Shown here in pieces: positions 3,119 to 38,051 of a stretch of DNA of 64,000 bases. The stretch spans positions 2,914,001 to 2,978,000 of the forward strand of contig NW_027270982.1 in assembly GCF_040938485.1 (NCBI RefSeq), given 5' to 3'. Origin of the DNA: Diadema antillarum. Its lineage: Eukaryota. The notes beneath the pieces are model-generated. The model was not told where the DNA came from, did no database searches, and saw nothing but the letters and a program-made list of their open reading frames with translations. How positions within the stretch are numbered: the first letter of the stretch is position 1; each line of letters opens with the position of its first letter. The translations under genes were made by a program, and so were the position numbers.

Positions 3119-3285
3119 TATAGATGATGACTGGCGGGGGAGAGAACATACCGAATATTCCACCCGAAGGGTTTGAAATGCTATTGAGGGAGGTTATAAG
3201 TCCCGAGCTCCCGAAATAGCATTTCAAACCCTGAGGGTGGAACGTTTGGTACATATTCCCGACAACAAAAGTCATCATCTGTTAT
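3119..3285. mobile_element. Palindromic MITE-like element of about 165 bp with TA-rich ends
   Basis: Left arm tagatgatgact...ataccgaatattccacccgaagggtttgaaatgctatt pairs with right arm aatagcatttcaaaccctgagggtggaacgtttggtac...agtcatcatctg. Confidence 0.7.
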
Positions 3286-6906: not shown

Positions 6907-6944
6907 CTCTAACCAAGGAGTTACCAGTAACTCCTTGCTCTAAC
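6907..6944. mobile_element. Micro-hairpin insertion (24 bp) with 7-bp TSD
   Basis: CTCTAAC|CAAGGAGTTAC-CA-GTAACTCCTTG|CTCTAAC. Confidence 0.8.
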
Positions 6945-7400
6945 GAAAATCCTATTATGACGTATTTCAGTGCGATTCCATCCCTAGAAAGTCAATGACC
7001 GGTGTTAGCTGTCCATCTAACTCGTATGTTTCATGAATGTTATAAGACGGGATTCAGTCATTATATTGGTGTTTCGGCTAACCAGAATGCACGTTGCTCG
7101 TGGTGATATAGCATCAAAGATGTTTACAGGGCAATACTCAAAAAGGTGAAGTTGCTCCCATGACTCATAATATACAGTGATAAATGTTTGTCGAACGCCT
7201 ATAAAGGGAACACCAGTTTGTTTGTTGTTGTTGTTGTTGTTTCATATGGATTAAAAAAGTCTTCGAGTGGAATGTTGGTTGAAATGAATGCCTTGTCATG
7301 ATCTTATTCAACACTATATAAAAAAAATCAAACTAGCTGTGTGCTCAAATAATGCGAAGAAATGTAAGAAAGAAGTTTATGACGAGGACTGAAAGAAAGT

Positions 7401-7745
7401 AGGACACGAAGAACATCTTGCCAGAGGCGCAAGCTTTTACCCTTTGGAGACACTTGGGTTATAGGGGAATAATGCAGCATGCTCTGATGACAAATGTCTT
7501 CCAGTAATGCAGAATGGCGGGGTCACATGGATCGTCGTTTCTCTGCCGGCAAAAGTCTAAAGACCGCAATTTTTCAATATTATCTATTTGAATTCAGGCT
7601 CAGTGAAGAACCTGGATTGATGATCATTAGGAGATATTGTTATCCCTCCTCGCTGAATTACCCTCGTCTAACCCGAAACACAGTAAAGTGTCTCCGCATG
7701 GGGTAGTAGCGAGCTCAGCCCTCTGGCGAAACATTCTTGCGTCCT
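7401..7745. mobile_element. Old diverged inverted-repeat element (MITE relic)
   Basis: aggacacgaagaacatcttgccagaggc...ggagacactt (7401-7455) is inversely similar to aagtgtctcc...cctctggcgaaacattcttgcgtcct (7686-7745). TSD not recognisable. Confidence 0.5.
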
Positions 7746-8094
7746 CCCTCCCCGTTTATACAGAGTGGAACCTCGTACGATTCAACTTGTAACATCTGAA
7801 CTATTCAATAGCGAAAGATGGTGGCGCCACATGGCCCTTTAAGTGGAGCAGTCTCAAAACTTACTTGCCAACAGATATGTTACCGCAGAATTTGAAACTT
7901 TTACTGCACGTCATGAATATGTTGCCAAGATATTATGCTGATGTAGACGGAATTGCGAGTCCAAGCATGCCAACAAAAACAGATGATACACGAATTAAAA
8001 TGATATTAATGGCAACATCAATAATAACTACAATACCAATGATATGACTCTATTGTGCAAATACTATAACCACGGACGGAGCCGATTATCATTT

Positions 8095-8297
8095 TCACCA
8101 CAGCCCTACCATGTAGGGAGGCTTCCCACCTCCCTGGCCCTACCAGGTACCCCAGCACACACCATGGAAAGAGGGACAAAATGGGTGGTGAAAGAATCTT
8201 ATCCAACAGTGCAAGTATAAAGCGACGGGCAGACAGGATTCGAACTTATGACCTTCTGATCAAAAGTCCCATATCCACTATATACCATGCATACCTT
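8095..8297 (-). mobile_element. tRNA-derived SINE fragment
   Basis: Minus strand has an A-box-like TGGTATATAGTGG and a B-box AGTTCGAATCC, followed by a body containing gggtacctggtaggg. No acceptor stem. Confidence 0.65.
8103..8143. mobile_element. Micro-hairpin insertion (27 bp) with 7-bp TSD, inside the SINE
   Basis: GCCCTAC|CA(tgta)GGGAGG-cttccca-CCTCCCTG|GCCCTAC; the left arm carries a 4-bp insertion. Confidence 0.6.
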
Positions 8298-11200
8298 GTG
8301 ATCCAGAATGTACACGTTGCTCCTCCCAGTCTCTGAGATATCTATACATTAGTTATATTTGGCGGAATCCCCATTCGGCCGGCAGCCTGTTTGATTACGA
8401 TGTCAACGGAAATTATACATTCTGGTTCTGACAGGGTTGATAAAGAGGCGCAGAGAATTCAATCCAATCCTACCCCTGTGCTATGTTCAGCTGCCTAAAA
8501 AATCCCCCTCAAGCCTATCATTGCACAAGGCATGTTGTAGAAGCGGCACCTAATAGGCACTCTGATCTTTCCTCATGTTCATTCGGTGAAAGTGCAGCTG
8601 ATTAGCGTTCAACGTACAATTTTTTTTCATGTTTTGTTAAAAATCCTCAAACATTTACAAGTCAAAGGGGCATTGATGAATTAAAAAAAGGACTTTTCAG
8701 GGATGTTTCCGATTTTAGCCGAATCAACAGGTGTTTGAGAGATTCCACGAAATGAACATGCTTCAAAATGAAGATAAACTGAGAAATACGAAACAACATT
8801 AGGTGGTTTAGGTATACTCTCTACATACAGTTATGTATATCATGATTGAATGATAAGATTTCCAAAAGATGTGACTATCACTTACAACTTGAAATAGTGA
8901 TTGTAAGAAAGCATGACGAAATTGTGCAGGCTGGGGGAGGGGGAAGGAAGTGCTCTATCGTTTATAGTTCCTTTGTCAATATCTCTGATTATGCATAAAA
9001 TATGATATGCCGCTGATTCTCCTGACTTCGGGGGAGGGGTAGTTCATTCCAGCATACATGATTTGTTGAAGGGGCAGGATAAGGGGGTTGGGGTGACTTT
9101 ATTGTATAAGTGAGAGAGAGGGAGACCAGTCTGGTCAGTTCACGGGCTACTGACCGGCCGGTCGGGCGAGGGCGGTGCGCCTTGGGACAACAACAAAGGG
9201 TACATCAACCCAACCTCATTGTTGGCCTATTCGGAGACTGCGTATTATCCGTCAATTCTTAACTTTTGAAGTGGCATTTTGTAAATATCTGCCCGAGCAG
9301 GAAAATTCTACTTGTTAGGGTTGTAAAGGCGCACTTAATGACCTCAGCGTCAACCAGTATCAAACTAGTCTCTCTTTTTTTTTCTGATGACCTCCGGAAT
9401 AAGTGTAATAGGAATACGTAAAACGCGGAGTGTTTGATATTGACAATGCAGTGAAAAATGTATGGCTGTTTTTTGTTTTGTTAGTTTCCTTTAAAACAAC
9501 TAATTCTCGCGGGTGTTAGTGGTAAACAGACCGCGGGCCAAATGTTCAAGTATTTGGGGGAACTTTGGTATAGGCCGATTTAATTAGCTCTCGACAGACG
9601 AAAACGCAAAAGTCTGTCGCAATACCATGGGTATATCCGAAGTAAGTATATAGGGTAAATTTACCACGAATGTGATGCGAAGGAAAATACCATGACATGC
9701 ATTTGTTGCTTATTTTCCACTCACATGCTATTGAATAGCTGAAAATCATGGGTGAAGAAAAAAAAGAATGTTAAGAAGGCTGATTGTAATGTGTAACCTT
9801 AATGAATATTTATGACAGATGCGGTAGATTGCAAGTCATGTCGGCCTTTCTTTTCAATTTACAAACACATATTGATGACAATAGGTTTTTGTCTCTTGGA
9901 GACTTGAAGACGATCCTTTGATATTTGAATCCATATGATCTTGAGTTCAATGTCATTGTAATTTCGGTAACCTCTAATGGGGGAAGGACTGCTAAATTTT
10001 GGCATTAATCGACGTGTATGACGCAAGCATCAAAAGACCCTCAAGCGATGAAGTCACATTACATTGACATAACATTCTGCGTGATATTGCTCTCTGTAGC
10101 TGAGCTTTTGTTTTTGTTTTTGTTTTATTTTGACAGTAGAATATGATTTTGTTTTTGTTTTGTAAAGAAAAGAAATCTTATGAGAACGTCTAGAATGTTA
10201 CGGCATTTAATCTTTTGTTCGGGGGGGGGGGGTTCTGGTAGATCGAGGTCTGTATGTGGCTGGACAGCATTTCGTGAATTCTCACGCTCAAATCATAAAA
10301 CATTTTCTCGGAGCTCGGAAACCCTTCTGAATATCGGTCATTGCCAAGTCTTTGATGCTATTGAGTGGAAACAATTATCGTATCGGAGTGCTTAATGCTA
10401 ACGCTTAATTACAAACAGAACATCTCCATTCGTGACCTTGGTTATTTAATTGTGAACGGCAAAAATACTAGGTGGAGTGATTGGTCGAGTGATATGGATA
10501 CACGGTCATGTCGATAGGAGACATTGCACTTTTTGATCCATGGAAAGGGAATTGAACGCTTTCATCTTTCTCTGTTTATTGCTATCACGGGCAACAGACG
10601 TGTAGATTTTGTCGTGACCCCAACGCAACCTTTAGCGATGACCTTGCAAATGTCGCCCAAAAACTCGCAAGTGCGACGCCAATGTTTGGTCAGGCGCGCT
10701 GAGCGGGAAAAGGGGGAGATATTGCATTCAAGATAATTTTTTTCCACTTTCGAGCAAATCCTGGCTGTGAAATAACGTGCTTGTTTTCTTAAACTCACCA
10801 TTTACGCCATCGTCAGGTGGTTTCATAGATTTTGCCTTCCTTTCTCTATGTTCATTGCATCACTGTCTTGTTTTCTTTAATAAAGTTAATACACGCACAC
10901 ACACACACACGCATAATTATCCTCCTCCTCAAGATGTATTCAGTAGGGTCGATTTCTGTTTGCCAAACTCTTCAGAGGAAGTAGAGGATAACATTCTACA
11001 TGACCTTTTTTTGTTTTCTACCCCGATTATATACATCTTCTGAAATGTTGAATGGGAAAGTATGACATTGCGACATACTTTGTTTCAGGAAAGGGTTTCT
11101 TGCAACATCAAACATTTTCATTCGGGGAATTCTCGCTAACTATATAAATGTCCAAAATTCCTAACGAAAAAAAAGTAAATACAGTGTACGCAAAAACACA

Positions 11201-12804
11201 CCTTCGCTAGACAAGCGGTGGAAATTAACCTTCATATTTTGTACGTTCATGTGAACCTGATCATTACCAACGGTAACCTATTCTAACATAACAGCAATGG
11301 TGTGTTTAGGCTTTGGTGTTCTTAGGGTTAATTTTCATAATGGTGTACATTCGTCATCCTCACACAACTGCCCACAAATTAGAATTATCACAAATCATCT
11401 CATACACAAAAAGAAACCATGGCAAACTTGATATCTTCATTAGAGTATACTGCACCTGTCAATCCAAGTTACAGAGCCCTTACAATAAGTTATAATCAGA
11501 TCATCAAGGAACACTGACCATTTCGAATAAAAGATATGTATTTGATTTAATTTGATGAAAGTTCATGCTAGACTGCTGCCCTAGGATAAAATGATTCCAT
11601 CTCACTAAGTCCTTCTTTAGTATAATTTTGCTGCAACGAAATGTAATCTGCAGAAAGTACCTTAACCTGTTTAACAAAAGTAATAAGCGGTATATCTATT
11701 TTGATCCCTCAAAAAGAAAACATTTATTAATGTAACGATATTCAGATACAAAAATCTTCTTTCGTGCATTGCTATGACTGAACCAGATAAAAAGAATGTG
11801 TCCTAAAACTGCTCGGAGCCAGGTGTGATGCGCCCTTTTACCGTGGGACTCAATTCATTAGCGTATTGGAGCGAAAGAAAATGTCAGGAACACCATTGCA
11901 ATCTTTTGACAACGCTACCAGAAGATGACAGCAATTATGAAAGTTCTCTTGTCGAAAATTCCCAAAACAAAAGAGGGTTCCGATAACATCAGTAGCTGGC
12001 GCGGAAGCGAGCGTTTGTCGCTTGCCAAACATATAACGAGGGTCTTTCTTTCTTCTTCCTCTTTCAGTTCTCCCCCCCCCCCCCCCCCGTCTCCCTCTTG
12101 GACTTTTTCCCCTTTTACCTCTTTTTTGTTAATCACACCGTTGCCAACTGTGTTTGTAAAGGAAGGTTAACAGCGAATGTGCATCCGAAGTCTCGGAGAC
12201 AATTAGAAAACCGTGTGTGTGTGTGTGATATTCAAAGGGGGCAAAGGCAACGCGAAAAGTTGGATAACTGCTTCGGCTGTCAGATGCATTGTTCAGTCAG
12301 ACGTCAGGTTATCAGTCCGTCGTGATACCAGATTCACCTGCCGCCTCCTGGCTACTTCCCTTGCACTTCGTTCTGTTCCTTCTGACGGAAGGACCGAAGA
12401 ATATGCCTTGACATCGGCACTTGATATCAGGCAAGCTCATCACAATGCCACAATTTCGTTCTCAACCTATACTTCGGCCGTTTGGTCGTATCTGCAGGCC
12501 AGCACTTTAAGAGCCAGAGCCATTTTATCGATATTAGCCTGGACCCCGACCGCTGAGACAGTTCTCGACACTACTCGCTGGAATCGCTTCATCTGTACTT
12601 TACCATTGCGAAGCGCATCTATTATCATCTTAACTTGGCTCATCCAAACTTCCTCTATTCGTCAGCTCATTCATGTCAGACAATCTCTTTGAATGCCAGC
12701 AAGACGAGGAGTAATTGTGTTTTTATACGCCAGCTGAAAACGACTCCGCCCACTTTTTAACAAAGTCGGTTGCCAAGGAGACAAAGACACTTCAGGCAGG
12801 GAAG

Positions 12805-12919
12805 ATGGAGAGTCGCCAGCTGAGCAACCGGGTGCACTTGATGGCGGCGCAGCTCGAGCAGTACCTGCTCGAAGCGCAAGACTCGTACGTGGATCAGCTT
12901 CTCAAGCGCAACTCGTACG
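12805..12919 (+). CDS. Candidate alternative first (or cassette) coding exon of the formin: MESRQLSNRVHLMAAQLEQYLLEAQDSYVDQLLKRNSY+G
   Basis: ATG in strong context (gggaagATGG); 38 GC3-rich codons inside AT-rich intron; ACG|GTGAGT donor in phase 1, matching the phase-1 acceptor at 20539. Confidence 0.65.
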
Positions 12920-12979
12920 GTGAGTTCTCTTGGCGCCAAACCGCGGAGTTCCGCTAGCAAAGAATAGAAGGGAAGCAGA

Positions 12980-13021
12980 GTTTAACCAGGGAGATGTTTT
13001 GTCTAACCTCCCTGGTTAAAC
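12980..13021. mobile_element. Micro-hairpin insertion (28 bp) with near-perfect 7-bp TSD
   Basis: GTTTAAC|CAGGGAG-atgttttgtctaac-CTCCCTG|GTTAAAC (TSD 6/7 identical). Confidence 0.75.
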
Positions 13022-13959
13022 CGTAGAGCAGCACGTAGCTCCAAGGTTAAACAAAACCCTCGAAATGATCATGTACTTAAGGTTCCTTCATATTTTTGTT
13101 CTCTCTTATCCGTACAAAGAACACCCTAGTGACAATTTACGATTAAATAGGATCTTGAAATCCATTAAAAATCCGGGATTAGTAGCCTTGAACCGTGTTT
13201 CGTCGTTTTAAGATTCATAGGTTATGGTGGCAACCTCTAATTCAACGAGGGTGAGAAAATATGATATTGGACCTTGAAAGTACTAGTTGTTGCATATTGT
13301 ACGTTGTCTTAAAAGACGCGTTAACTTGTGGTGAGATCAGCATTCGTGTTCTAACTCCAACGAAACATTGCCCTTTGGATGAGATAAAAGTTTGAATTTA
13401 CGAGTTATCTCTAGGAATGATCGTGTAATCATGGTATTAGGTATATAGCAGTAGGGTCAGAACGGTCACGATTCGTTCATATTAGTTCTTGTCAAAAACC
13501 ACAATGTTTGTTGCAGTAAAATATCGCAACGTCTGCATCAAGTATAGCTATAATGGCACCAGCCCTGTACTAATGAAAACGTTAATTAATTGCTTCGTAG
13601 AGCATTGTTATCTTGAAAACAAAATTTAAGGTTGAGAAACGACACATTCAAATCATCTCAGGTGTGTTCTTCACCCTTGGTAACTATTCATTTAATTTCT
13701 TTGATAAAGTGCATATCATTCTGACCGCCGAACTGGTTCCTCCGCTTCTGTAAATTGGCGCCCACTTCCGGCTCCGTTCGCGCCCCTCGAAACGCGCGTG
13801 CATTCTCAAACATACACATGTTGCACCAAGGAAGTGGCAAATCTCCTTTCAACCTCTCTGGTTGCGATACAGCGGAAATGTCGGCGACCAAATACACTTC
13901 TGTATATCAAATTGTACACTGCATAATCGATCTCAGCCGAAGTAACCAGGACAGTCATT

Positions 13960-14875
13960 TGACTCATAGCAGTTGGTAGCGCGTCTGCGTCTAGATCCAA
14001 AGGACCCGAGTTCGATTCCCGAGTCTTGAGGGCTTTTTACACTTGTAAATTTGTGCTTAGTCCCGTACCAACGGTGGGGCTAAGGGGGGGGGGGGGGGCC
14101 TTAGCCCCACCGTTGGTACGGGACTATCCTTAGCCCACTTTCTGTTTACACTCGTTTTTGCGAAAGTGGGCTAGCCCCACCGTTAATCCGGTACTATCTG
14201 GCCCTGCAAAATAGCAGGGTTTGCACCGCAATTGCGGTGCCAAGCAAGTGAGTGTAAACAGAACGAAAAAATAATCTGGGCTAAGCGACGGAGACGAAGT
14301 CCGACCCTCACTGACCAATCAGAAACGAGGTAATCAAGTGCTGCCGGTGCGTGCGTGTACGTGTACAGAACACAGCGTAATCATGAATATTCATGTGGTT
14401 TGGAAAGTCCGGGGCTAAGAAATACGAGTGTAAAAAGGTCAGTTTCTCCTTAGCCCCGGACAAGAGATAGTACGGGACTAATTGGCCAGTGTAAAAAGCT
14501 GAAAAAATTGGTACGGGACTAACGATAGTCCTGGGTCAGAGAAAGTCCGGGGTTAAGAAACACAAGTGTAAAAAGGGCTTAACTGAGCAATGTTGTGTGT
14601 AATCATCCCATCCCCTCTAGTAAGAGGCAAAACACTCTGTCCCTCAGATAGGACATGCTTAATGGAGGTCCCGTGTGTGAAAGAGTCAAAACTCATGCAC
14701 GAAAAAGATCCCGCTTAATTCGAGCAGGGTGGATTACAGTACCTGGAGAAGTGGTCCCGCCTTACATACAACTGGACCCCATCATTTGCCTATGGAAGAC
14801 CAGCTCTTGCAGTCGAATATTATGGGCTATCCAGCCATCTTCTCAGATGGGAAAACATGAAACAAACGAACAAAC
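13960..14875 (+). mobile_element. Deu(Nin)-domain tRNA-SINE interrupted by a DNA-transposon MITE
   Basis: tRNA head (tagcagttggtagc A-box, gagttcgattccc B-box) at 13960-14028. The body resumes at 14579 with gtccctcagataggac...atggaggtcccgtg...catgcacgaaaaagatccc...gagcagggtgg, which resembles the Deu-domain consensus as I recall it. (AAAC)n tail near 14860-14875. Confidence 0.75.
14030..14578. mobile_element. Non-autonomous TIR element of about 549 bp (Harbinger-like)
   Basis: TIRs gggctttttacacttg and caagtgtaaaaagggc; flanks TGA and TTA (imperfect TNA TSD); internal repeats of tagtcccgtacc, tagcccc and agtgtaaa; hairpin at 14058-14125. Confidence 0.75.
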
Positions 14876-15865
14876 CATAACGGTTCGATTTGAGCATCAA
14901 ATGAGAATGTTGAGAATGTTATGGAGGCTACTCATACATTGACTAAAACTTCTTAGTTACCATATCATAATGCTTAATAGTTCATGACTATCCATTATAG
15001 GATTGATCAGTACTGTGCGTCACTTTCTGAATACGAAATAGTGTGGTTGGTTTCCTATTTTGTCGTCTTGTATCAGCGAGGAAATTAGAAGAAGAAGAAA
15101 AAGGGAGAGGAGGAGGAGGAGTCGAGGAGGAGGGGAAAAAAGAAGAATGAGAATGCAAAGAAGTAAACAGCAAATCGTCATTAAAGGTTGAAAATAACTA
15201 TCGCGATACTCCTTTCTACGGTATGGAATAGTTCACATTCACCACAATGCATGTAGCGACCGGCTGACATGTTATTCATGACCTTGACTTCAGTAAAAGC
15301 GGATTGATCTGGTTTAGACTCAGTTATATCGAGGGAAGCTGAACTTGGGACTAGAGACTAACACCAAAAAAAACTCTCTCTACTATGATGATTGGTTTAA
15401 GTGGTGCTTGATTTTGATCTGCCATTACTTCCTTGATCTAGCAGATAAAAGTTAGTTGAAATAAGTAACGTTGATCTTTGTTATCATTTAGGCGTCAATG
15501 TCGATTATCAGCTCTTGTGAAGGCACTTGATAGTGGTTGATCTACTTGAGAGACAGAAATGATCTGATTTTGATCATGGGCACACTAAAAGAAAATGTTG
15601 ATGTTTTACATAAGCATTCTCCTACACTCCTTTATTTTGGGGAGCTTATATCTCATGCCTCACGTGCCCCGGTTTTGACCCATCATCTTCCTCTTCCCTC
15701 TCGCTTTTCTCTGTCCACCGTGAAGGTAGTCTCCTCCTGTCATTCATTCCACACTTACTTACCTTTCCTCTTTCCCTCATTACAAGGAAGCTGTCTTTGT
15801 ATGTGGGTAGGCCCTACTTTGTCTCTGTCTTACTTTACTTTCTTTGCCTCGTTTATCAGTTTTGT

Positions 15866-16080
15866 ATTGTAACTACAGTTGTTTTCTTTAATGAAGGGAC
15901 TGCAGACTACAAGCTCTGCTTTTGAGCAGTCCCCTCCATTTCCAACCATTTTTTCCGTACTTGTCTTGAAATTACAAACTTTTATTATTTTTCATAGTTT
16001 GTTTGTCATTGCATTGTTGTATCATTAGTATATGTGTATTCAAATGTTGTACTCGCATGTGTTGAAAATGAAATAAAATA
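15866..16080 (+). mobile_element. Probable LINE 3' end with stem-loop
   Basis: Hairpin atgaagggactgc...gcagtccctccat (15891-15938) followed by a T-rich tract ending gaaaatgaaataaaata. No ORF2 coding sequence recognised. Confidence 0.35.
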
Positions 16081-16934
16081 TTATAGGCCTAGATATTTTC
16101 AGTCGTCGAGGAATTAGAAGAAAATTGGTGGAAGGAAGAAAATCACTCTGGCTGTTTATCTTCTCCTACAGACATATGAAGTCAAAATTAAGACATCATT
16201 CAGAAGGGCAAAATTGATCTCTTATCGCAGAGAAATATCCCTCAGTAAAGAAAACTAAAAGATTCATAAAGATCTGCAGGAATTGGGTCCATGTCTAGCA
16301 CCCATGTGGAGAGTACACGGACAGAAGTGTGACTTATCAGCCCAGCAGAACAACCAAATCCCATGTCGTACGAGAACAAAACACACAAATACTTCAGAGG
16401 AGAGTGCGCCTGAAGGTGAAATTCATATCACTTGAATGTCGGTTTGACAACCAGAGCGGTTTCCAAAGGGCTCTTTGAAACGAATCGTTCATAGTACGTG
16501 AGTTATGCCATTTGTCATGCTCCTCGTTTGATTTTTGGGCGAAATCATTGAAAACGTCGCATTGTCGTGTAAGTTTTCTTTGTCTTTGCAACTATAGAAA
16601 TAATGTATTTAGGACTGCTTCATTACACATCATTCTTCCAAAAGAAGTTGATTTCTTCATACAAAGTAAAAGCAAAAGTTAGTCGTGTTTGTGTATTCAA
16701 ACTGGTGTAACTTTCTTAACTTTTGTTCCCAATGTCTCTCAGACTTCATCCTGAAATGAGGATATAGGGCCTAAGTTTACTTCAAAGTTATGTATGTAAA
16801 TGAATGCGTTTTCGAAAAATAATAACGCTCTTCCATCACCAATTGTTCCAAGTGCCATCAGATTACAGCTTCTAGGCATGACAGAGTCCAGATGCTTATA
16901 GATCTGCCCACATGTCATGTTGTTGTGCATCAGA

Positions 16935-17003
16935 CTAAAATCAGGGAGGTGAGGACATCTCACCTCCCTGCTAAAATCAAGGAAACCACCTTCCTGCTAA
17001 GAT
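16935..17003. mobile_element. Two tandem micro-hairpins sharing the CTAAAAT target repeat
   Basis: CTAAAAT|CAGGGAGGTGAG-gacat-CTCACCTCCCTG|CTAAAAT|CAAGGAA-accac-CTTCCTG|CTAAGAT. Confidence 0.75.
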
Positions 17004-19149
17004 TGATCGTAATTAGCCAGGATGTCGCAGCAAGGGCACTTATACATGATTTGATGAATTGATTGCGGGATTGATACGAACATAATTACGTAGTACAGGT
17101 GGCAGAGGATAGTCGTGGAAAAAATTTGCACTCGCACAAATTTCGTTCACATTTTTCCGTAGAATCTCCAAATGTGCATTTCTGTTTATCTTGCCATTGT
17201 CTGTGCATAATTATAAAGATGGCGGAGGAATCGGAGGTGGTAGTGAATAGCAACGGTTGTTCGGTACTGCCTGGCGTGACAGCGAAGGTTCTGGCGTGAA
17301 AGTGAAAAGCGCCCTCACCTCAAAATTCCTATTGTCGCTTTTGTCTCCGCGCGGGAATGTTGTCACGATATCATTTCTGACTCGTCACTCGTTGACTCGC
17401 TGTGAAGGATTATGGAACAATATCTCTGTCAAAACACCATGCAGCACCGTAAGAGATCTCCTTAAGGACTTAGCCTCTGACACCGTGCCGCACAAAGAAT
17501 TCTACCCACGTATCGAATTCTGGAAGTATGCTAACAATCTTTGGGAAATATTTTTGGCATGTCACATAGCTTCAAGCTGGAAGAAAATATAGAGTTTTGG
17601 GTTGCTTTTTTCATATTTAGGCGTATATCATGTGATCGAAAGTACTAATTCACTGCGTGAAGCGCCAACACTGAGCTCTCAAAAGCTCAATGAACATGAC
17701 CTAAAGGAGAAATTCAAAACGAATTGAGCAGGGTGGGGGTGGGAGATGGCGGAGTTAGTGTTCCCTACCTTTCTGTCGGCATGGTTGGTAGCACATTTAG
17801 GGGCAATAGAATGCTCTTCAAAAGTGGAACGAAGCAGGAAAATACTGGCTCAAGAGTACCAATAGTGGCCTAAAAGACCTACTTATTTTAATGTTTTAGG
17901 ATTGCCTTATCGGGGACACTTGGGGAGTTTTGCAACCTCAATGTACATGTATTTCAGATTTGATCGCGCACAAGATTGTGGATTCCGCATAATTTCAGAC
18001 CTGTCGACAATCGTTCCTCATAAGTTTACAATTGCCGTCAACATGCCAGTTATTACGTGCCCATAATTGAATGATCTGAGTAAGCGCGAAATGCGTATTA
18101 CTCCTTTTCGTTCTTTACTTTAGTCTAGACCTATTTGTCACACATTTGACGGCATGGATCAGCCGGTTGGGCAATTTCAACTACATTTTGATATAATCGA
18201 ATTGCTCTCATTGAGAATGAACTCTCAAGTTGAGGTCGCGTCGTGAGAGCAATTACCGTCAAGAGAAAAATGATTTCCATGTTGTCATCATCTTGCCAAG
18301 CGGAGCGGTGCTATTCGGAGTGCGAGAAGCGGTGAGGAGTGACCCATGGGACAACCCCCAAAATGGGGTTAGAGGGGTCCTTTCGCTTATTTGGGGTCAA
18401 GCGGGGTTGATTTGAACTTGAGTGAGCGAGAACAAAGAAATGGGAACAGCCAGCGCCTCGGCGGACTTTGGAGTCCGTCGAGGTACCCTGCCCCCTTCGA
18501 AAGGGAAAATGAGAAACATTTGCGCTGGCGCGAAAGCGTGTTATTGCGAATTTTAGGCCTGGGGCTTAGAAGACCCTTTTTGTTTTATTGTTCCGGTGAA
18601 TTTGTCCTGAGATCTTGGGTTTACATGGATTTACACAGCCCCTGAAGGCACATTTAAGCTGCCACTTCCTATTCGTGACTTTGGCTTATATTCAGGGTTG
18701 TGAAGGTAGAGTGCATAGCTTCCATTAAAGACGTAATCATTTACTGCTTGACATTATCATATTGTATGAATTTCAGATGTTATTCGAGTTTTGTCTGAAC
18801 TGCATGCGAATGCACGCTTCGGATCACATATATTCACAGCTGGTATGTTTTTGAACCTTGTTGTAGATCGACTAAAAGCTCAATTGAAATTACTGTACAG
18901 AAGCCACTGAAACATGTAAAATGGCGGGTATTCATCCCAAACAAATTTCAAGATCAAACTAATCGCATACCTTGATAATTATATTTGTTCTCATTGTGAC
19001 TTCCTAGACATTCCTTGCTTACTTCATCTATTTATTTATGTAGTCATGTATTTATCATCGTTATCATTATCATCATTATCAAATCATCATCGCGGTCGTC
19101 ATCGTCGTCATAATTTGTATCGTCATCATTGTCACCTTCCTTAAACCTT

Positions 19150-19900
19150 CTTATTTCATTCAACGGCTTGAGATGTAGATGAGTTGGGTTTTAGTTCTTC
19201 TAATCGGATATCAAGTCGCACGTCGGGGTCAGCTTGATCTTTGTAGTGGAGCATGTTTTCATTCCGAGTCAGATTTGACCTCTCTGAAAGTTTTGGATGC
19301 GCAGACTGACCATCTTTTGCTTGAATCCTCCTGAGCATGACGATGTATACACAATATTGTCGGCAAAGATTCGCAAATGCGTCGTGACGCGCGGCGCAAT
19401 TTCGGCATGGTAATCTGTCAATTTTGTTGTCGGTGTAGGCCATGAAAAGGAAGAAAATACCCTAGGAATGCGGTAACAAATTCCAGAAGTCGCCGGCCAA
19501 GCCTCTCGGAGAAATTCAACGTACTGTAGCAAGAGACTGTGACCCCGAAAACGTGCTCTTCGTCGTGTTTTCACTGAGCTTAGCCATTGTAAATCTGGCG
19601 TGAAGTACTGGCACGCCTTTTCCCGAGAGACCTTGCGTGGGGGTATTCGGAAGATCTCAAAATGGCCGTCGAACCAGACACGCGGCACATATTAGGTCCA
19701 TTTATTGACGGACCCATCAAAGAAGCCGAAATCGTTCTTACCATATAATGACAAACACTCCATTTTCCATGACATGTACCATTTTAAGAAAAGCTGAAAC
19801 TCAGCGAAATATTGGGTTTTTTGAAGCACACATCGGCTTTCGACAACAGTTTGGCGATCTTTCGGCATCAACAACGATCAAAGTATGACCATGTGTCGAG
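19150..19900 (-). pseudogene. Highly decayed non-LTR retrotransposon reverse transcriptase (CR1/L2-like)
   Basis: Minus-strand frames contain, in the correct order, LQWLSS.KT.R, PATSG, FMAYT..D.LP, LRIFADNIVY (FADD-like) and KLSERSN, resembling RT domains 4-6. Several frameshifts are needed. Confidence 0.5.
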
Positions 19901-20538
19901 CCTGCAATAAACTCGCCATCCCATGTAGCCACGATGATAGTTAAGAGTTCAATTCGATTCCTTCCAACCGCTATCGATATCCGTGGTGCCTTTCTACCAC
20001 CTGCCATCATGACAAGTGCTTACCTTTAATCCTTTCGTGTGAGTTTCACGCCATGGTCGTGAGTCCGATGAGTTTGACTTTATGAACTTTGGTTAAAAGC
20101 GTCAACAAATTTTACACCGTCAATCTTACAACTGCACTTCAGAGAACTTAAATCATGAGCAGGAAACTTTCTGAAAGTGAGGCTAAGCAACGGATAACTC
20201 CGACAAAAGTGAAGGTTCCCATTGAGCTCACAACTTTGCCATTTTAGGCAAAAATCGCAAAAACGCAGCTTTAAGCTGAGTCTATAAATACCCAAGTAAA
20301 AAGAGTGAATTATTTCGTCAGTGTGATGCCAACTTAAATCTCTTCAGTATTTAATTAGCGGAAAATTAAGTATGTTCATGTCGTTTTTCGAACAGAAAGC
20401 AGCTTCTCTGAAGATATTCTGATGGTTTCTAACAGCACCTGTTTAATGACATTTCCTACGTTTACAGAATTTATGCAAGGGAACACACAATGACGATGTT
20501 ATTACCCATTTCTCCTGTTTTCTCTCTCCCTTGCTCAG

Positions 20539-20572
20539 GTCTCAAGCTTCTCGACATCCTCACGAATCTGAG
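20539..20572 (+). CDS. INF2: INF2-like formin, 34-nt small exon: (G)LKLLDILTNL(R)
   Basis: Long pyrimidine tract ending ttgctcAG; GAG|GTAAGT donor; phase 1 to 2. It joins the 3055 and 36216 exons in frame and matches the INF2 segment GLQLLDVLARLR. Confidence 0.92.
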
Positions 20573-21099
20573 GTAAGTGTGCATGGTTGAAATACCCCCC
20601 CCCCAAAAAAAAAAAAAACCAACAACAAACAAACAAACAAACAAACAAACAAACAAACAAAAACAAAACGTGACTGTGTAAAACGCTGTGATCTCTATGT
20701 AACTAGAGCCCCTGGTAAGATGGCATTGCAACCATGGAGCTATAACATATGGACTCCGTTTGATCTCACAACAGTGAGTGCGTATGTGTGTGTGTGCAAA
20801 CACCCGGAGACAACCTGACCTGCTCTGTCTTGTGGACTCTAGCATTATTGCTCCGAGTGCGCTAACTTGGCAATGTTCTGGTTCGATTCATACCTCATTA
20901 GTTTCATTAATGAAACTGATTAAAAGACTTCAGCCTACATAGGAGCATGAACCAGCGTGCATGCACAATTGCGAAACGGTTCGTCAGCCATGTCAGCCAA
21001 ATCATTATCCTTCTTTCATCAGCTAACCTCGGCAGAGTGGAAAGCTAAATAACGATAGTCAATGGCCTGACTGAAATACGACAAACTATACGCATTGAC

Positions 21100-21350
21100 A
21101 AATACCACTCGCTCGTAAAGTTAATTGCACGACAGGCAAATGTGAAGTTCGTTCGAGGTATATTTTCAGTTCCACTATAGAACTTGAGCTCCACGTCGAG
21201 TAGAATAAGTAGGGCAGGGGAGAGAGTGTCTCTCCTCTCACACCTCCTATGAGCAGGGTGTGGTTTGGAGGCAAGAAAGATGGGACAACAAATTATATTT
21301 TGAAACGTCTGTTGGACACGCCCATATACCAACGTGGAAGCTAAATACAT
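21100..21350 (-). pseudogene. Possible decayed L1/Tx1-type RT fragment
   Basis: RRCERRDTLSPALLILLDVEL resembles the RGVRQGDPLSP.LF.L..E.L motif. Only one motif supports the call. Confidence 0.35.
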
Positions 21351-21843
21351 AATCTCTGGCCCGGAATGTGACAAATGATAATGGTTTGCCTGGTTTCGAT
21401 CAGTCAGCCACAGGAAAAAAAAAAAGAGGAAGACAAAATGAAGGGGAAAAGAAAACCGAGAAAACAAAATCACAGATAGCCCACAGAGTCATCGAAACTA
21501 GTTATCATGTCCGCCATGCCAAGGAAACTCACCTGCGACTCCGGCTAGACTGTATGGTTTGAGTATCCTTAAACCATCTGTACAAAAAGCCATATTTCAT
21601 TTCAAGCGTAAAAGTCAAACACAAGTCGTATGAATCCAAATTCGATGGGTTGGGAGGCGATTGTGTTTGATCTACAAATTTGCTTTCGTTATATATTTTT
21701 GTGTGTAATAGCGCTATAAAACGGCTCCGTTGGTGCAATGCATGTTTATAACACCATTGTTTAAGACATTTGAGGCAGAGAGGAAAAAAAACACCAAAAT
21801 ATTTCTTTCCAAACAAGAAGTCGGCAGTAAAAAAACAGAACAA

Positions 21844-22012
21844 GGCCCTGTTTTATTAACGCTATTCGTAAAGTTACGAACATCTTACGAGCGACTGGTG
21901 ATCAGTTCTGATGTGCTATACTTATCAGAATTTCCATAATTCAGCACAAGAACTAATCACCAGTCGCTCGTAAGTCGTTCGTAACTTTACGAACAGCTTC
22001 ATGAAACACCCC
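21844..22012. mobile_element. Palindromic MITE (CWG-type TSD, Harbinger-like)
   Basis: Arms of about 65 bp: ttcgtaaagttacgaacatcttacgagcgactggtgatcagttct and agaactaatcaccagtcgctcgtaagtcgttcgtaactttacgaa; right end atgaaacacccc|CAG. Confidence 0.8.
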
Positions 22013-22435
22013 CAGGACTACTATGCGAGTGATTTCAAAGTCATGGAGGATATAGGTCAACATACTTGAAAGTGCAGAGTGTGTAAAGGATTTCAAGAAA
22101 TGAAAAGGGGACTCTAAGACATACCTGATCATTCTATTCTCCCCCCAAAATGGGTTGGGTGAGTTAATCCACTGCTGATATCAAGCTAGCTTATTTTGTT
22201 TGTTGGACAATATTGTCTAACCTCATGTTAACAGTCATAGTTATTCAAGTACGACTATTCTTTGGAGAAAAGCTCTCCTTTATGTTTTGTGGCGTTTCTT
22301 TGCAATTCTTAGGACTCCCTTTATTTTGTCATGAAAGTGTAGTGTAACGAAGTTGATTCTTCCACTTCCTGTTTTGATTTGCTTATTTAATGTACAGCTG
22401 TACATAGCAAGCTGAGACTGCAGGTCCCCCTACCC

Positions 22436-22438
<3 letters not shown>

Positions 22439-22498
<60 letters not shown>
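22439..22498. repeat. (CA)n microsatellite, about 30 units
   Basis: Read directly from the sequence. Confidence 0.97.
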
Positions 22499-22503
<5 letters not shown>

Positions 22504-25500
22504 GCTTTTAAAAAAAAAGGTAAAAAATGAAAAAGGAATAAAAATCAAGAAACCCCATGAATAATTCGTTGTCCTACAAGTGTGACATCTCGAATTGTTG
22601 TAGTCATCCTATGAAGTGATGATTGACGGTTCATGGAGTTAACCAAAACTTTAAAAAAAAATCATAATTTTGAAAGGATAAATCGCTTTTCCTCGGACTC
22701 CACTTGGTGTACAAATTACGCGCCTGCATCACTGAATATGCATGATTATAATAATTTGTTGGACGTATATAGCGATTTAGCTCTGATATCATGGTTACTT
22801 TGATATACACTATAGAACTTGCGCGGCTGTGATTGCACACTATGTAGAACAGACGAAATCATAGCTTGCAATATTCTTTTTAATCATATTTTCGATATCT
22901 TTGTAGGTCCTTGACTTCATTTCTCCTGTGTTTGTTTTTTTTTTTTTCAGCAGAGAATGAGAGAGAAAGTTCCGGTAAATATTAGGTCGGAAACATTAAG
23001 ATGATGTTCGGTACTTGATAATAAAGAAGCCCATTCATTCAATTTTCCCCGGCAAAGGCTCACGGGACTAAAAAAAGAAATGAGACCTCGTCGCGGGTGT
23101 AAGTCCTAGGTCACATTCTTCCCCGCTTGGAGCCCTTCAGAATTCAGCGCACGAAAACGAAGAATTCAAGTACATCCAGTGAGACCACACAAAATCCAAC
23201 TATGGAGTGTCTGAACAAAAGATGGTCTATTCCACTCTCCCTTAAAATAGCGTCCATGCAGATAAACGCCGGATCTGGGATCATTCAAGTTTATAGTTGT
23301 AAGCATATTTCTTACCAGCTGAAAGCCATGGCAAAAAGGGTACGTTTATATCGCTTTTTTGGCATAAGGGCACCTTTAAAGAGGAGGAATTTCTCTCCCG
23401 TATTGCCTATCGGTGGCCTTCAGACACGTCAGATCTAAAAGGGTGGATAATGTTTGTGCATGCCCATATGTTCAGCTGTAGATTTAAGAGCTGTGATCTG
23501 TATTTGATCGGACACGGTCATGTATCACGATCTGTGATGGTTACCAAAGTCTACGCCAGAACATTGACAGCATTCTTGGCAACGCGAATATTCATCCCCC
23601 TACATATTCCTTCGCGATATTTTCTATCGACGCGGGAAATACTCATGTAAGATTTATTTCTGTTTGCCGGAAACATTTTCCTGCCTGTAGGCCTACACAA
23701 TGTGTCTCAGGGGACTTTGTTTCCCCATTGTGTCTATATTTCTGCTCTCAAATTGTTCTCAGCTTTATCATTAGTCCATAACTCATTTCGTTAACATTGT
23801 CTTTTGTCGCGCATGATATTCTGTCACGTATGTCATAATACACTCTGTCTACACTTGTTTTTCTTGGAATGTGACTTGTTTCTGTCCTGCTCCATCTTTG
23901 TTCCCGCCAATTCTCTTGTTTGTTCACATCCAGTCTCTTCCACAATATGTTGCTATGCACTTTTTTTGTGTGTGTGGCGGTAACACCCTTGACCTGGCTG
24001 GCAAGGTAATTTACCCTGCCGGTAAACTACACCTTCATCGCATATAAAACCACCAATACCAATAGCCCCATTAGCACCGGTGGAGGGGGGGGGAGGCTGT
24101 AGTAATAAATGACAAGAGTACATGTACAACGTCATGTCACTTCGGCCTTTAATACCTTTACATTACGTGGAAGGTCATTGCAGTAATAATGAAAGAGGAT
24201 ATTTAGCAGACAGAGCTAACATCGAATTCGGAATTTGTGGAGGTGGTTAACTGACCAATGTCGACGGTCAAGTACACATCTTTGGGGGTACGAAGTGGGA
24301 GCTGACCGTATAGAACTCGAGATATTTTTGTAAGGATATATAATCATATAGGACCTATCTATGGAGCTGACATTATGTGGTAGTGTTAACACTTTGGTAT
24401 CTTGAAGAGAAGTTTATCCATCTCACATTGGGGGATTTGTGGTATGATTTTGTCCCTCGATCAAGGGTATACCTCCTTGTTTGTCTCTCCATATTCATAA
24501 ATCCATCAATGACATTCGGATTGAAGTCACTAGTCTATTCCGGTCAATTCTTTTAACGGGCGTCTTTGCCACAGGGAGCAACATTTCACCTCGCTATACC
24601 CCCTTTTCTCATCTCATCTCACCTTTCTCGCAAGTTCATCGATTGAATAGCGTTGAATTTCGCCCAGGATATTCTTGAACCCTGCGCCTTTTGGTTACTT
24701 GTTTAGAGCGGGGAAAATCAGCCGAAATGTCTGAACGGCATGCTCGGACGTGACCCCGGGTCAGACGACGGTCGATAAGTTTGCAAAATGCTCGAAGGTC
24801 GAGTCGGGTAAAGGTCACTATTCTTCTGAGAAACTTGATGCTCGCTCCGCCGACCAGAATTATTCCATCATCTTCGTGATCGATGAGGTATGCTTTTCCT
24901 TAACTCCTTCAGTCTCCGGAAGGAATGAGCCGTAGATGCTTCACATGTCTTATTGGCATTAATTGAATTTCAGTAATAGACGACCGTTTAGTTGCCATGG
25001 AAGTAAGGTTGGCCAAATTATATCTACAACTCCTCTATTCAAAGTATAAGACAACTGGAAAGGCCGTAGGATATCCTACAGTTTGTTGGCTGGTTTGGTG
25101 TGTAATGTGTCCTCATCGGTCACCAGGAACACTTGCATTAGGTGAATTTCCCGTGTTTGTAACCACGAGGGTTATGCTTGACCTTGTCAGGCTGCAACAA
25201 TCCCTTTGTTGATGTTTTGACTTTGTGTCTGTGGCTAGCAACGAAGAAGGTGGATGCATTTAAGCTACATTATATTACAATCACCGGGTCGATGGAAGAA
25301 TTCGGCTGTTGTGGTGATAAAATGCCTCAGCAGAGGGTACAACCGCTGCTGTTAGATGGCTTATCTATTCTGAATCGAGGACCTTCAGGGTTGAGAGTCC
25401 GTGGCCTTCTCCTCTGAACCACAGCAACTCCAGGTTGAACACTTTTTCCGGCGTTTTTAATGATTCAATGAAAGATGATTACAATTCAATCATTGATTAA

Positions 25501-37269: not shown

Positions 37270-38051
37270 TAGTTACGTTCAGACGGCAGGCCCTAACCTC
37301 GAGGTTAGGAAACCTCGAGGTTTCGCTCTTCCCCCCTAACTACGACGTGTGTCCACACGACGAATCTTAACCTCGAGGTTACGAAACTTCGAGGTTAAGC
37401 TTCTGCCCCCCGTAACTACGAGTGGGTCCTACTCGATGTTAAAACCACAAAACCGGAAGTTTCAGCCCACACTGCTAACAAGGCGTCTATTTATTCTTTA
37501 GTCGAACCCTGTCGGACTCGCTTACGGGTACTCTTTTTCTCTGTCATGGTATGCAGAGATAGCACTGCACTGATGACTTTATGCCTTTATGAAGATATTC
37601 GTCGAAAACATTTTTTTAGCGTCGGAGAAGAATATAGAATACAGTTTGATAGCGAGTTCGACGTGTTCAGTTTCAGAGATCAAGCGCATGGGAAGAAAAG
37701 ATGATGTTGTTGTGTCATGCGTCATAGGTTTTTCACGTGTGGTGTATTTGTGGTGTACGTTTGGGAGGTTGACCCGGAAGCAGAGGGAAATTGTGGGGGC
37801 CGGAGTTTACGGCGAGGTCACTCTTAACTTCGAGTTCGTTGTGTTTTGTGTCCACACGGTGCTTAACTACGAGTGGGGACCCCCCGCGGCTCGTGGTTAG
37901 AGCGCTAACCATAAGATTTCTCGTGGCTCGAAACTTCGAGCAAACCTCGAGGTTTGCTAACTACGAGTGCGTCTTCACGGTCCCTAACTACAAGCTCTAA
38001 CCTCGAAGTTTCCTAACTTCGAGGTTAAGGGCTCCCGTCTGAACGTAACTA
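37270..38051. mobile_element. Non-autonomous TIR element of 782 bp (Harbinger-like TIR)
   Basis: TIRs tagttacgttcagacgg and ccgtctgaacgtaacta; subterminal arrays of aacctcgaggtt/aacttcgag and taactacgag. Confidence 0.85.

What the first reader, a model, noticed from the sequence alone, without database searches (positions are those of the whole stretch)
6907..17003. Family of 19-29 bp hairpins with CAGGGAG ends and 7-bp target duplications: candidate P-superfamily excision footprints or an ultra-minimal mobile element
Seen: five insertions within 10 kb (6914-6937, 8110-8136, 12987-13014, 16942-16970, and a decayed copy at 16978-16996). All begin CA(G/A)GGA(G/A) and end CT(C/T)C(C/T)TG; arm consensus is about CAGGGAGGT(G/T)(A/G). 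Each is flanked by its own 7-bp direct repeat (CTCTAAC, GCCCTAC, GTTTAAC/GTTAAAC, CTAAAAT). Position 6 of the repeat is always A and position 2 is usually T, suggesting a symmetric target preference. No two interiors are the same. Known: Drosophila P transposase cuts 17 nt inside its termini, and end-joining leaves up to about 16-17 bp of each TIR between the TSDs; P-family elements have CA...TG ends and 7-8 bp TSDs. Inference: these are germline scars of a THAP9/P-like transposon. Variable interiors fit repair products better than a replicating MITE. Such elements are too short for standard repeat annotation and may be undescribed.
Basis: partly seen in the sequence, partly recalled or inferred. 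Interest (0 to 1): 0.78.

Follow-up and report, generated by a model that had tools for sequence, protein, structure and literature searches.

The report
P-type transposon excision scars
The five tiny palindromes are scars left where cut-and-paste jumping genes once sat and then left; thousands of such scars in this animal genome keep at most 18 letters of each transposon end, which shows where the enzyme cut.

Summary
All five short inserts are at the stated coordinates. Four have an exact or one-mismatch 7-bp duplication, and the fifth shares a duplication copy with its neighbour. Genome-wide, CAGGGAGG..CCTCCCTG within 46 bp occurs 6675 times against 10 for the control; the looser pattern gives 18030 against 1447.

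They are excision footprints, not mini-elements. Each arm is a nested truncation of one of several related transposon ends, often with filler between the arms. Arms pile up at exactly 18 nt and almost never go further, although intact elements continue with a fixed sequence. Copies with identical interiors also share flanks, so they sit inside other repeats that amplified later.

An intact parent family exists:
- at least 75 ends, about 99% identical over 80 nt;
- two complete copies of 1556 and 1649 bp, each with its own 7-bp duplication;
- non-coding by size.

The 7-bp duplication, the palindromic GT...AC target (as in Galileo) and the 18-nt limit (17 nt in Drosophila P) all point to a P-superfamily transposase. 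P transposase genes are present, one of them intact. None could be tied physically to these ends.

The scan reached the same reading earlier on other DNA of this genome (s1-225721).

The parts
6907..6913 (.). left copy of the 7-bp target duplication CTCTAAC of scar 1
   Evidence: identical to 6938-6944
6914..6937 (.). scar 1, 24 bp, two arms of end family E (CAAGGAGTTAC...), about 13-14 + 10-11 nt
   Evidence: Family E hairpins occur 119 times in the genome against 0 for the control. The same 24-mer is listed at four other places in that call.
6938..6944 (.). right copy of the duplication CTCTAAC
8103..8109 (.). left copy of the duplication GCCCTAC of scar 2
8110..8136 (.). scar 2, 27 bp. The right arm is 15 nt of end family B (reverse complement CAGGGAGGTGGGAAG). 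The left arm is CAGGGAGG interrupted by four extra letters (CA-TGTA-GGGAGG).
   Evidence: family B 18-mer seen 1047 times against 0 for the control
8137..8143 (.). right copy of the duplication GCCCTAC
12980..12986 (.). left copy of the duplication GTTTAAC of scar 3
12987..13014 (.). scar 3, 28 bp. The left arm is 7-9 nt. The right arm is the full 18 nt of end family A' (TTTTGTCT-A-ACCTCCCTG, one substitution).
   Evidence: A' arm described; present in a contig of another individual (X3 record 17)
13015..13021 (.). right copy of the duplication, GTTAAAC (one mismatch)
16935..16941 (.). left copy of the duplication CTAAAAT of scar 4
16942..16970 (.). scar 4, 29 bp. Arms of 12-13 and 13 nt of the CAGGGAGGTGAG(A/G) ends, with 3-4 nt of filler.
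   Evidence: spanned by contigs of two further individuals (X2 record 15, X3 record 24)
16971..16977 (.). middle copy of CTAAAAT, shared by scars 4 and 5. This is the mark of a second insertion into the same 7-bp target.
   Evidence: Genome-wide, exactly 7 bp is the commonest spacing between neighbouring scars: 8 of 50 listed close pairs, against about 1.6 expected if spacing were even.
16978..16996 (.). scar 5, 19 bp, decayed and therefore the older event. The right arm resembles family B with one substitution (reverse complement CAGGAAGGTGG).
16997..17003 (.). right copy of the duplication, CTAAGAT (one mismatch)

Best explanation
The five inserts are germline excision footprints of cut-and-paste DNA transposons. 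These belong to a group of related families whose ends read CA(A/G)GGAG...

Proposed sequence of events:
1. An element inserted and duplicated 7 bp of a target with the palindromic preference GTNNNAC.
2. At excision the transposase cut one strand at the element boundary and the other strand 18 nt inside each end.
3. Each donor flank was therefore left with an 18-nt single-stranded tail of transposon end sequence.
4. End joining trimmed the tails from their inner ends, sometimes added filler, and sealed the break.
5. The product is: duplication, arm of up to 18 nt, optional filler, arm of up to 18 nt, duplication.

Shown here: the product structure, the 18-nt limit, the 7-bp duplication and target preference, the existence of intact elements with the same ends, and the germline status of the scars.

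Inferred: the strand chemistry, and that the enzyme is a P/THAP9-type transposase acting in trans on non-autonomous elements. The chemistry is taken by analogy with the 17-nt 3' tails left by Drosophila P transposase.

Scars 4 and 5 record two successive insertion-excision cycles at the same 7-bp target.
For: Enrichment: 6675 against 10, 18030 against 1447, 119 against 0.

Duplications: exact 7 bp in 10 of 14 distinct sampled sites and in 3 of the 5 window scars.

The arms are nested truncations of defined ends. They pair freely across variants; for example a family A arm of 18 nt is joined to an A' arm of 18 nt. So the two arms come from two ends, not from fold-back copying of one end.

The cap:
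- I tallied the 100 listed family A 15-mer hits by hand, collapsing amplified copies and haplotype duplicates.
- Arm lengths were 15:18, 16:14, 17:7, 18:20, 19:7 and 20-25:0. The 19s match the chance of a filler A after 18.
- Eight rows were intact elements.
- Genome-wide, the 20-mer is found 82 times. Of these, 75 are intact elements and only 7 are anything else.
- Family B gives perfect 18+18 palindromes, with 17+18 and 18+1+18 as the neighbouring classes.

Length: 294 sites of 47-76 bp against 6675 of 16-46 bp.

Intact parent:
- 75 ends are nearly identical over the 80 nt shown.
- Each has a different flank, with the same (G/A)TNNNAC preference.
- Two complete copies were located by their duplications: C42:950387-951942 (1556 bp, GTCAGAC) and C7:5125334-5126982 (1649 bp, GTCTGAT).

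Germline: scars 3-5 lie in contigs of two other individuals.

Likeness to P:
- Drosophila P excision leaves 17-nt non-complementary 3' tails. Its laboratory repair junctions have the same layout of duplication, arm of up to 17 nt, filler, arm, duplication (PMC2895639; PMC10983969).
- Galileo and 1360, both of the P superfamily, make 7-bp duplications. Galileo's has the palindromic consensus GTANTAC (PMC4168063, PMC3698922).
- The genome encodes P-type transposases. One is an uninterrupted 984-aa frame with all catalytic domains and a THAP exon upstream.
Against: - No element carrying these ends was found next to a P transposase. None of the 75 family A ends lies near a PF12017 hit, a P-protein hit or a THAP hit.
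- The P transposase loci I could read (10 kb each) show no matching ends and no inverted repeat with a duplication.
- The cleavage chemistry is inferred from products only.
- A few products exceed 18 nt per arm: a 48-bp form (30+18), a 52-bp palindrome (26+26) and about 5 events in family A. A second route must therefore exist.
- The arm-length and target tallies were made by eye from listed rows, not from the whole set.
- The total counts are inflated by the two-haplotype assembly and by scars copied along with host repeats.
Confidence: 0.78

Rival explanations
1. They are excision footprints as described, but the transposase belongs to a superfamily other than P. This could be a hAT-like or undescribed enzyme that also cuts far inside the element ends.
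For: No physical link between these ends and a P transposase was found. The sized intact family is non-coding. A T at position 2 and an A at the next-to-last position of the duplication are also typical of hAT targets (my own knowledge).
Against: hAT elements make 8-bp duplications. Their excision goes through hairpins on the flanking DNA and leaves no long remnants of the element ends (established knowledge). The 7-bp GT...AC palindromic target matches Galileo of the P superfamily. A long stagger of about 17 nt is so far known only for P transposase.
Confidence: 0.13
2. They are ultra-short mobile elements (micro-MITEs of 19-48 bp) that are themselves moved by a transposase and so multiply.
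For: A 48-bp form occurs at more than 50 places with the same interior. Several short forms recur, for example the 24-mer of scar 1 at five places.
Against: - The recurrent forms share their flanks over 10 nt or more, so they were copied as part of a larger repeat. Examples are TCA-CTTTACA..CTTTACA-TGTA for the 48-mer and the same right flanks for other recurrent forms.
- L013/L014 carry the same 27-mer in repeat units of about 910 bp.
- Otherwise interiors differ from site to site, as nested truncations plus filler.
- The flanks of the five copies of the scar 1 24-mer were not examined.
Confidence: 0.03
3. They are internal-deletion derivatives made by interrupted gap repair (copying from the sister chromatid from both ends, then joining), without any defined staggered cut.
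For: This route is well known after P excision in flies. It may explain the rare products with arms of 24-30 nt.
Against: It predicts a broad, smooth distribution of retained lengths. Observed instead is a pile-up at exactly 18 nt and an almost empty range from 20 nt to the full element.
Confidence: 0.05
4. Chance palindromes or assembly artefacts.
For: None beyond the fact that short-read contigs break at the hairpins (X2 records 9 and 10).
Against: Controls give 10 against 6675. Shuffled windows give 0.05. The scars are present in independent individuals.
Confidence: 0.01

Closest known systems
Excision footprints of the Drosophila P element (17-nt 3' tails joined by alternative end joining)
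   Same: The layout is identical: both copies of the target duplication are kept, each side retains a nested piece of the element end up to a fixed maximum, and filler often lies between (junction table in PMC2895639). The ends are CA...TG.
   Different: The maximum is 18 nt, not 17. The duplication is 7 bp, not 8. The end sequences are unrelated. These are thousands of natural germline events fixed in a genome, not laboratory products. The enzyme is not identified.
Galileo and 1360 (Hoppel), P-superfamily transposons of Drosophila
   Same: 7-bp duplications. Palindromic target with GT at the start and AC at the end (Galileo GTANTAC). Mostly non-autonomous copies.
   Different: The inner target positions differ; here they are closer to GTTNAAC. 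There are no long fold-back inverted repeats. The host is a different phylum. I know of no report of footprints for these elements.
THAP9 / Pdre2 P-like elements of vertebrates
   Same: Deuterostome genomes carry P-type transposases. This genome has an uninterrupted 984-aa one with HTH, split RNase H, GTP-binding and THAP9 C-terminal domains and an upstream THAP exon.
   Different: No link was shown between that gene and the scars. The vertebrate elements have other ends and 8-bp duplications (my own knowledge).
Genome-wide transposon excision scars described in rice
   Same: Same idea: excision repair products can be read in genome sequence (PMC4423477 and PMC5023962, listed; seen in the search listing only, not opened).
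   Different: Those come from other superfamilies, whose scars I expect (my own knowledge; papers not read) to be short or deletion-prone. Here the scars carry up to 36 nt of element sequence and are recognisable without comparing genomes.

Membership tests
Transposon excision footprint (end-joining product) | Both copies of the target duplication are kept around a short remnant | tested here: met
   Exact 7-bp repeats at 3 of 5 window scars and one mismatch at the other two. 10 of 14 distinct sampled sites are exact.
Transposon excision footprint (end-joining product) | The remnant consists of the outermost letters of both element ends, truncated from the inside, with occasional filler | tested here: met
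   Nested arms of 8-18 nt of families A, A', B and E, with fillers
Transposon excision footprint (end-joining product) | Intact elements with the same ends and the same duplication length exist | tested here: met
   75 family A ends. Complete copies of 1556 and 1649 bp with 7-bp duplications.
P superfamily of DNA transposons | Target duplication of 7-8 bp | tested here: met
   7 bp throughout. The literature gives 8 bp for P and 7 bp for Galileo and 1360.
P superfamily of DNA transposons | Palindromic target motif (Galileo GTANTAC) | tested here: met
   G1 about 57%, T2 about 76%, A6 about 80%, C7 about 57%, from hand tallies. A6 in 13 of 13. Compared.
P superfamily of DNA transposons | Staggered cleavage about 17 nt inside the ends, leaving long 3' tails on the donor | tested here: inconclusive
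   The products stop sharply at 18 nt per end, as this cleavage predicts. The cut itself was not observed.
P superfamily of DNA transposons | The autonomous member encodes a THAP / split RNase H / GTP-binding transposase between the same ends | tested here: inconclusive
   Such genes are present, but none lies near the 75 family A ends. No matching ends were found within 10 kb of five such loci. I could read no further genome sequence.
P superfamily of DNA transposons | GTP as cofactor of transposition | not testable with these tools
   Needs biochemistry
MITE / self-mobile miniature element | Many copies with the same interior at unrelated sites, each with its own duplication | tested here: not met
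   Recurrent forms share flanks and lie in host repeats. The flanks of the five copies of the scar 1 24-mer were not checked.
hAT superfamily | 8-bp duplication; excision scars made from flanking-DNA hairpins, without long element remnants | tested here: not met
   The duplication is 7 bp and the scars carry up to 18 nt of each end. The features of hAT are from my own knowledge.

The most novel reading that the evidence does not exclude
This genome holds a P-type transposon system that is still active or was active very recently. Its parts would be:

- a non-autonomous family of about 1.6 kb, whose copies are about 99% alike and mostly seen in only one of the two assembled haplotypes;
- a low-copy THAP9-like transposase that moves it in trans, with the uninterrupted 984-aa gene on contig C284 as the candidate;
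- a cut 18 nt inside the ends, just before a conserved inner block (AAAGGAG) shared by otherwise different end families.

The thousands of scars would then be the first evidence outside Drosophila that the long 3' stagger is an ancestral trait of P/THAP9 transposases. They would also be a natural archive of germline end-joining events in a deuterostome.
Probability: 0.35. Interest if true: 0.7.

Novelty: new member of a known kind. Interest (0 to 1): 0.55.

Why it matters
- **Cleavage geometry read from sequence.** Excision scars with long end remnants are the signature of the unusual staggered cut of P transposase. So far this is documented biochemically only in Drosophila. Finding the signature with an 18-nt limit, thousands of times, in a distant animal suggests the long stagger is an old property of the superfamily that includes human THAP9. 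It gives a concrete prediction for where such enzymes cut.
- **A record of germline repair.** The scars are a large natural record of how germline double-strand breaks with non-complementary tails were repaired: trimming, microhomology and filler.
- **Annotation.** Standard repeat annotation is unlikely to flag inserts of 17-36 bp. They could be mistaken for regulatory hairpins.
- **Assembly.** They break short-read contigs.

Tried and rejected
1. I looked for the scar ends around P transposase genes: 18 loci of 3 kb and 8 loci of 10 kb. I followed with exact and tolerant scans for an inverted repeat plus a 7/8-bp duplication. Nothing convincing turned up. A CAAGGGGGTGAGG motif 2.5 kb upstream of one P locus (L039/L040) did not behave as an element end.
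2. Pairs of P loci that looked like copies are the two haplotypes of single loci, 96-99.6% identical over 10 kb.
3. I searched the genome with the 10 kb around the intact P gene, hoping to find the empty allele. An unrelated 1.1-kb high-copy repeat at L034:6866-8003 swamped the result.
4. I compared the coordinates of the 75 family A ends with P-domain, P-protein and THAP hits. None coincide.
5. I fetched relatives of the P transposase from public contigs (P0001-P0003). No matching ends were found. One record had no DNA, and another was a single locus seen in many samples.
6. Two scans of metagenome contigs for the family A end found nothing.
7. A full-text search for the end sequence hit only unrelated primers and the like.
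8. The 48-bp form looked like a micro-MITE until its conserved flanks showed it is carried by a host repeat.
9. I first took A and A' for the left and right ends of one element. One search showed they are variants of the same end.
10. Reads of a related species (X4) do not align across 16513-16981. The empty-site test between species therefore stayed open.
11. The last pattern search, meant to show the right end of the C42 copy, missed that row because of the anchor letter.

Limits met along the way:
All later genome work used pattern listings and coordinates only.
- No stretch of N was filled.


Full report
**What is in the window.**
- Scar 1 (6914-6937) is CAAGGAGTTAC-CA-GTAACTCCTTG between two copies of CTCTAAC.
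- Scar 2 (8110-8136) lies between two copies of GCCCTAC. Its right arm is 15 nt of CAGGGAGGTGGGAAG read backwards.
- Scar 3 (12987-13014) lies between GTTTAAC and GTTAAAC.
- Scar 4 (16942-16970) lies between two copies of CTAAAAT.
- The second of those copies is also the left flank of the decayed scar 5 (16978-16996), whose right flank is CTAAGAT.

An unbiased scan of the window looked for any 14-46 bp insert with an exact 7-bp duplication and a terminal inverted repeat of 6 bp or more. It returns only scars 1 and 4, while shuffled sequence gives 0.05 per window.

**Genome-wide frequency.** The window is part of a 1.75-Gb assembly in 2963 contigs.
- CAGGGAGG, 0-30 letters, CCTCCCTG occurs at 6675 sites against 10 for the reversed control.
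- The CAAGGAGTT family of scar 1 gives 119 against 0.

These totals overstate the number of events for two reasons.
- The assembly holds both haplotypes. Three pairs of 10-kb loci are 96-99.6% identical throughout.
- Some scars were later copied as part of other repeats (see "Not micro-elements" below).

A rough guess is a few thousand independent events per haploid genome. I did not verify that.

**Duplications and target.**
- Of 14 distinct sampled sites elsewhere, 10 have an exact 7-bp duplication and one has a single mismatch.
- In 13 exact duplications, position 6 is A every time and position 2 is T nine times.
- Hand tallies of flanks printed give G1 about 57%, T2 about 76%, A6 about 80% and C7 about 57%.

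The target is therefore a palindrome, GTNNNAC.

**The arms are truncated transposon ends.** The printed matches resolve into related end families.

| Family | End sequence |
|---|---|
| A | CAGGGAGGTGAGAGGAAA |
| A' | CAGGGAGGTGAGACAAAA |
| B | CAGGGAGGTGGGAAGAGA |
| E | CAAGGAGTTA(C/T)CAG |

Further families are visible.
- Every arm keeps the outermost letters and is cut back from the inside, often with a few filler letters between the arms.
- Arms of different variants are joined in one scar, for example A(18)+A'(18). The two arms therefore derive from two ends, not from copying one end back on itself.

**The 18-nt limit.** Intact family A elements continue after position 18 with AGGAGTGGGCACTGGAT. 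I tallied the 100 listed hits of the family A 15-mer by hand, collapsing amplified copies and haplotype duplicates.

| Arm length (nt) | Count |
|---|---|
| 15 | 18 |
| 16 | 14 |
| 17 | 7 |
| 18 | 20 |
| 19 | 7 |
| 20-25 | 0 |
| intact element | 8 |

- Seven of 27 arms of 18 or more being followed by A is what a random filler letter would give. The limit is therefore 18.
- Genome-wide, the 20-mer occurs 82 times. Of these, 75 are intact elements and only 7 rows (about 5 events) are anything else.
- Family B gives perfect 36-bp palindromes (18+18) at several sites, flanked by 17+18 and 18+1+18 classes.
- A' gives 18+18 as well.
- Total length collapses accordingly: 6675 sites of 16-46 bp against 294 of 47-76 bp.
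- In the first 50 sites, 47 are 35 bp or shorter.
- Most of the 294 longer sites are one amplified 48-bp form or two neighbouring scars.

**Not micro-elements.**
- The 48-bp form (30 nt of the B end plus 18 nt of the other end) occurs more than 50 times with one interior. Its flanks are also conserved (TCA-CTTTACA ... CTTTACA-TGTA). One scar was therefore multiplied by a host repeat.
- The same holds for other recurrent forms, which share their flanks.
- It also holds for the 27-mer carried in repeat units of about 910 bp in L013/L014.
- I did not check the flanks of the five identical copies of the scar 1 24-mer.

**An intact parent.**
- The family A end with its internal continuation occurs 75 times and is nearly identical over the 80 nt printed.
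- Each copy has a different left flank that obeys the same target preference.
- Only 6 of 49 distinct sites appear twice, that is in both haplotypes. This hints at recent activity.
- I searched for the end of the element followed by a given copy's own 7-mer. That located two right ends: C42:950387-951942 (1556 bp, GTCAGAC on both sides) and C7:5125334-5126982 (1649 bp, GTCTGAT).
- At about 1.6 kb the family cannot encode a transposase of 800-1000 residues.
- No P-domain, P-protein or THAP hit falls inside or near any of the 75 copies. The family is non-autonomous.

**Which enzyme.** The genome encodes P/THAP9-type transposases: 18 PF12017 hits and 47 protein matches, many of them broken.
- One gene on contig C284 is an uninterrupted 984-residue frame. 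It has the HTH, RNase H N and C, GTP-binding and THAP9 C-terminal domains and a THAP exon about 0.5 kb upstream.
- That gene is listed at one place only.
- I could not find transposon ends around it or around four other P loci.
- Attempts through public contigs of related proteins and through metagenomes also failed.

The assignment therefore rests on behaviour.
- Drosophila P transposase leaves 17-nt non-complementary 3' tails on the donor. The resulting junctions have the same layout as the scars here (PMC2895639; PMC10983969).
- Galileo and 1360 of the P superfamily make 7-bp duplications. Galileo's has the palindromic consensus GTANTAC (PMC4168063, PMC3698922).
- The ends are CA...TG.

I put about 0.65 on P-superfamily membership and about 0.9 on excision footprints as such.

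**Further features.**
- *Repeated use of one target.* Among 50 listed pairs of scars lying within 30 bp of each other, the commonest spacing is exactly 7 bp. This is 8 pairs against about 1.6 expected if spacing were even. The arrangement is the same as scars 4 and 5 in the window, L010 and family E on C72. It means a second insertion into one copy of the duplicated 7-mer, followed by a second excision. Scar 5 is more decayed than scar 4 and is therefore the older.
- *Shared architecture of the ends.* Different end families have about 10 conserved terminal letters, about 7 variable letters, then a conserved AAAGGAG(T)GG block starting near position 17-19. The inferred inner cut falls at the edge of that block.
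- *Rare longer arms.* Arms of 24-30 nt probably come from interrupted gap repair.

**Population data.** Contigs of two further individuals of the same species span scars 3, 4 and 5 (X3 records 17 and 24, X2 record 15). The scars are thus inherited alleles, not artefacts of one assembly. Contigs of a related species do not align across 16513-16981, so the between-species empty-site test stayed open.

**Verdict.**
The limit is corrected to 18 nt per end, and the caveat stands that the transposase is not physically linked.
- The alternative reading, an ultra-minimal mobile element, is rejected.
- The kind of thing is known from Drosophila genetics. Its occurrence at this scale in another phylum, and the 18-nt limit, are new as far as the papers I could search show.
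- The scan reached the same reading earlier on another piece of this genome (s1-225721).

Noticed in passing
window 13976-14960 and 15616-16107: Very high-copy repeats: summed contig depth is up to hundreds of thousands at 13976-14960, and about 8,000-25,000 at 15616-15943 falling to about 1,300-2,100 at 15944-16107. Loose ends at 14582 read like a tRNA T-arm (GGGTTCGATTCCCG), which suggests a tRNA-derived SINE.
   Followed up: no
G000:C284:4300881-4304548 (L034:2382-6049): Uninterrupted P/THAP9-type transposase gene: a THAP exon plus a 984-aa frame with all catalytic domains. It is listed at one place only, in an assembly that otherwise shows both haplotypes. It is a candidate active transposase. 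No element ends were found within the 10 kb read.
   Followed up: partly
L035/L038, L036/L037, L039/L040: These pairs of 10-kb loci from different contigs are 96-99.6% identical end to end. The 1.75-Gb assembly therefore contains both haplotypes, and copy counts from it are roughly doubled.
   Followed up: yes
L034:6866-8003: A 1.14-kb repeat with dozens of copies at 94-98% identity, unrelated to the scar families. It swamped a DNA search of the genome.
   Followed up: no
G000, listing (e.g. C1383:188007, C467:1222758, C4:3597948, C46:3996591): Two multi-copy families with intact THAP-domain frames. One has about 40 copies with a 108-aa frame; the other has 8 or more copies with a 152-aa frame and identical scores. 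They could belong to transposons, possibly the missing autonomous partner.
   Followed up: no
L007:1494-1528; the CACTGTAAAA class: At some scars the two flanks are inverted rather than direct copies (ATATGGA ... TCCATAT; TGTAAAA ... CTTTACA), as if one copy of the duplication had been flipped during repair.
   Followed up: no
L013:1501-1527 and 2410-2436 (also L014): The same 27-bp scar sits in successive repeat units of about 910 bp. The same 27-mer also recurs on other contigs (C2:2907664; C4:2336754 and C4:2337668, 914 bp apart), whose flanks I did not read. A scar was carried along when a tandem or dispersed repeat multiplied.
   Followed up: partly
G000, listing: Besides the peak at 7 bp, six of 50 neighbouring-scar pairs are spaced by exactly 28 bp. 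This is not significant after allowing for 31 bins and is unexplained.
   Followed up: no
window 3179-3221; 37368-37381; 37939-37958: Other short palindromes with near-duplicated 7-bp flanks and different ends (TGCTATT...AATAGCA; two built on AACCTCGAGGTT). They may be scars of other families or chance.
   Followed up: no
window 6907-17003: All five scars of the 64-kb window lie within 10 kb, where about 0.1 loose-pattern sites would be expected from the genome-wide density. This could reflect local hopping or a preferred region. The window was chosen because of them, so no significance is claimed.
   Followed up: partly
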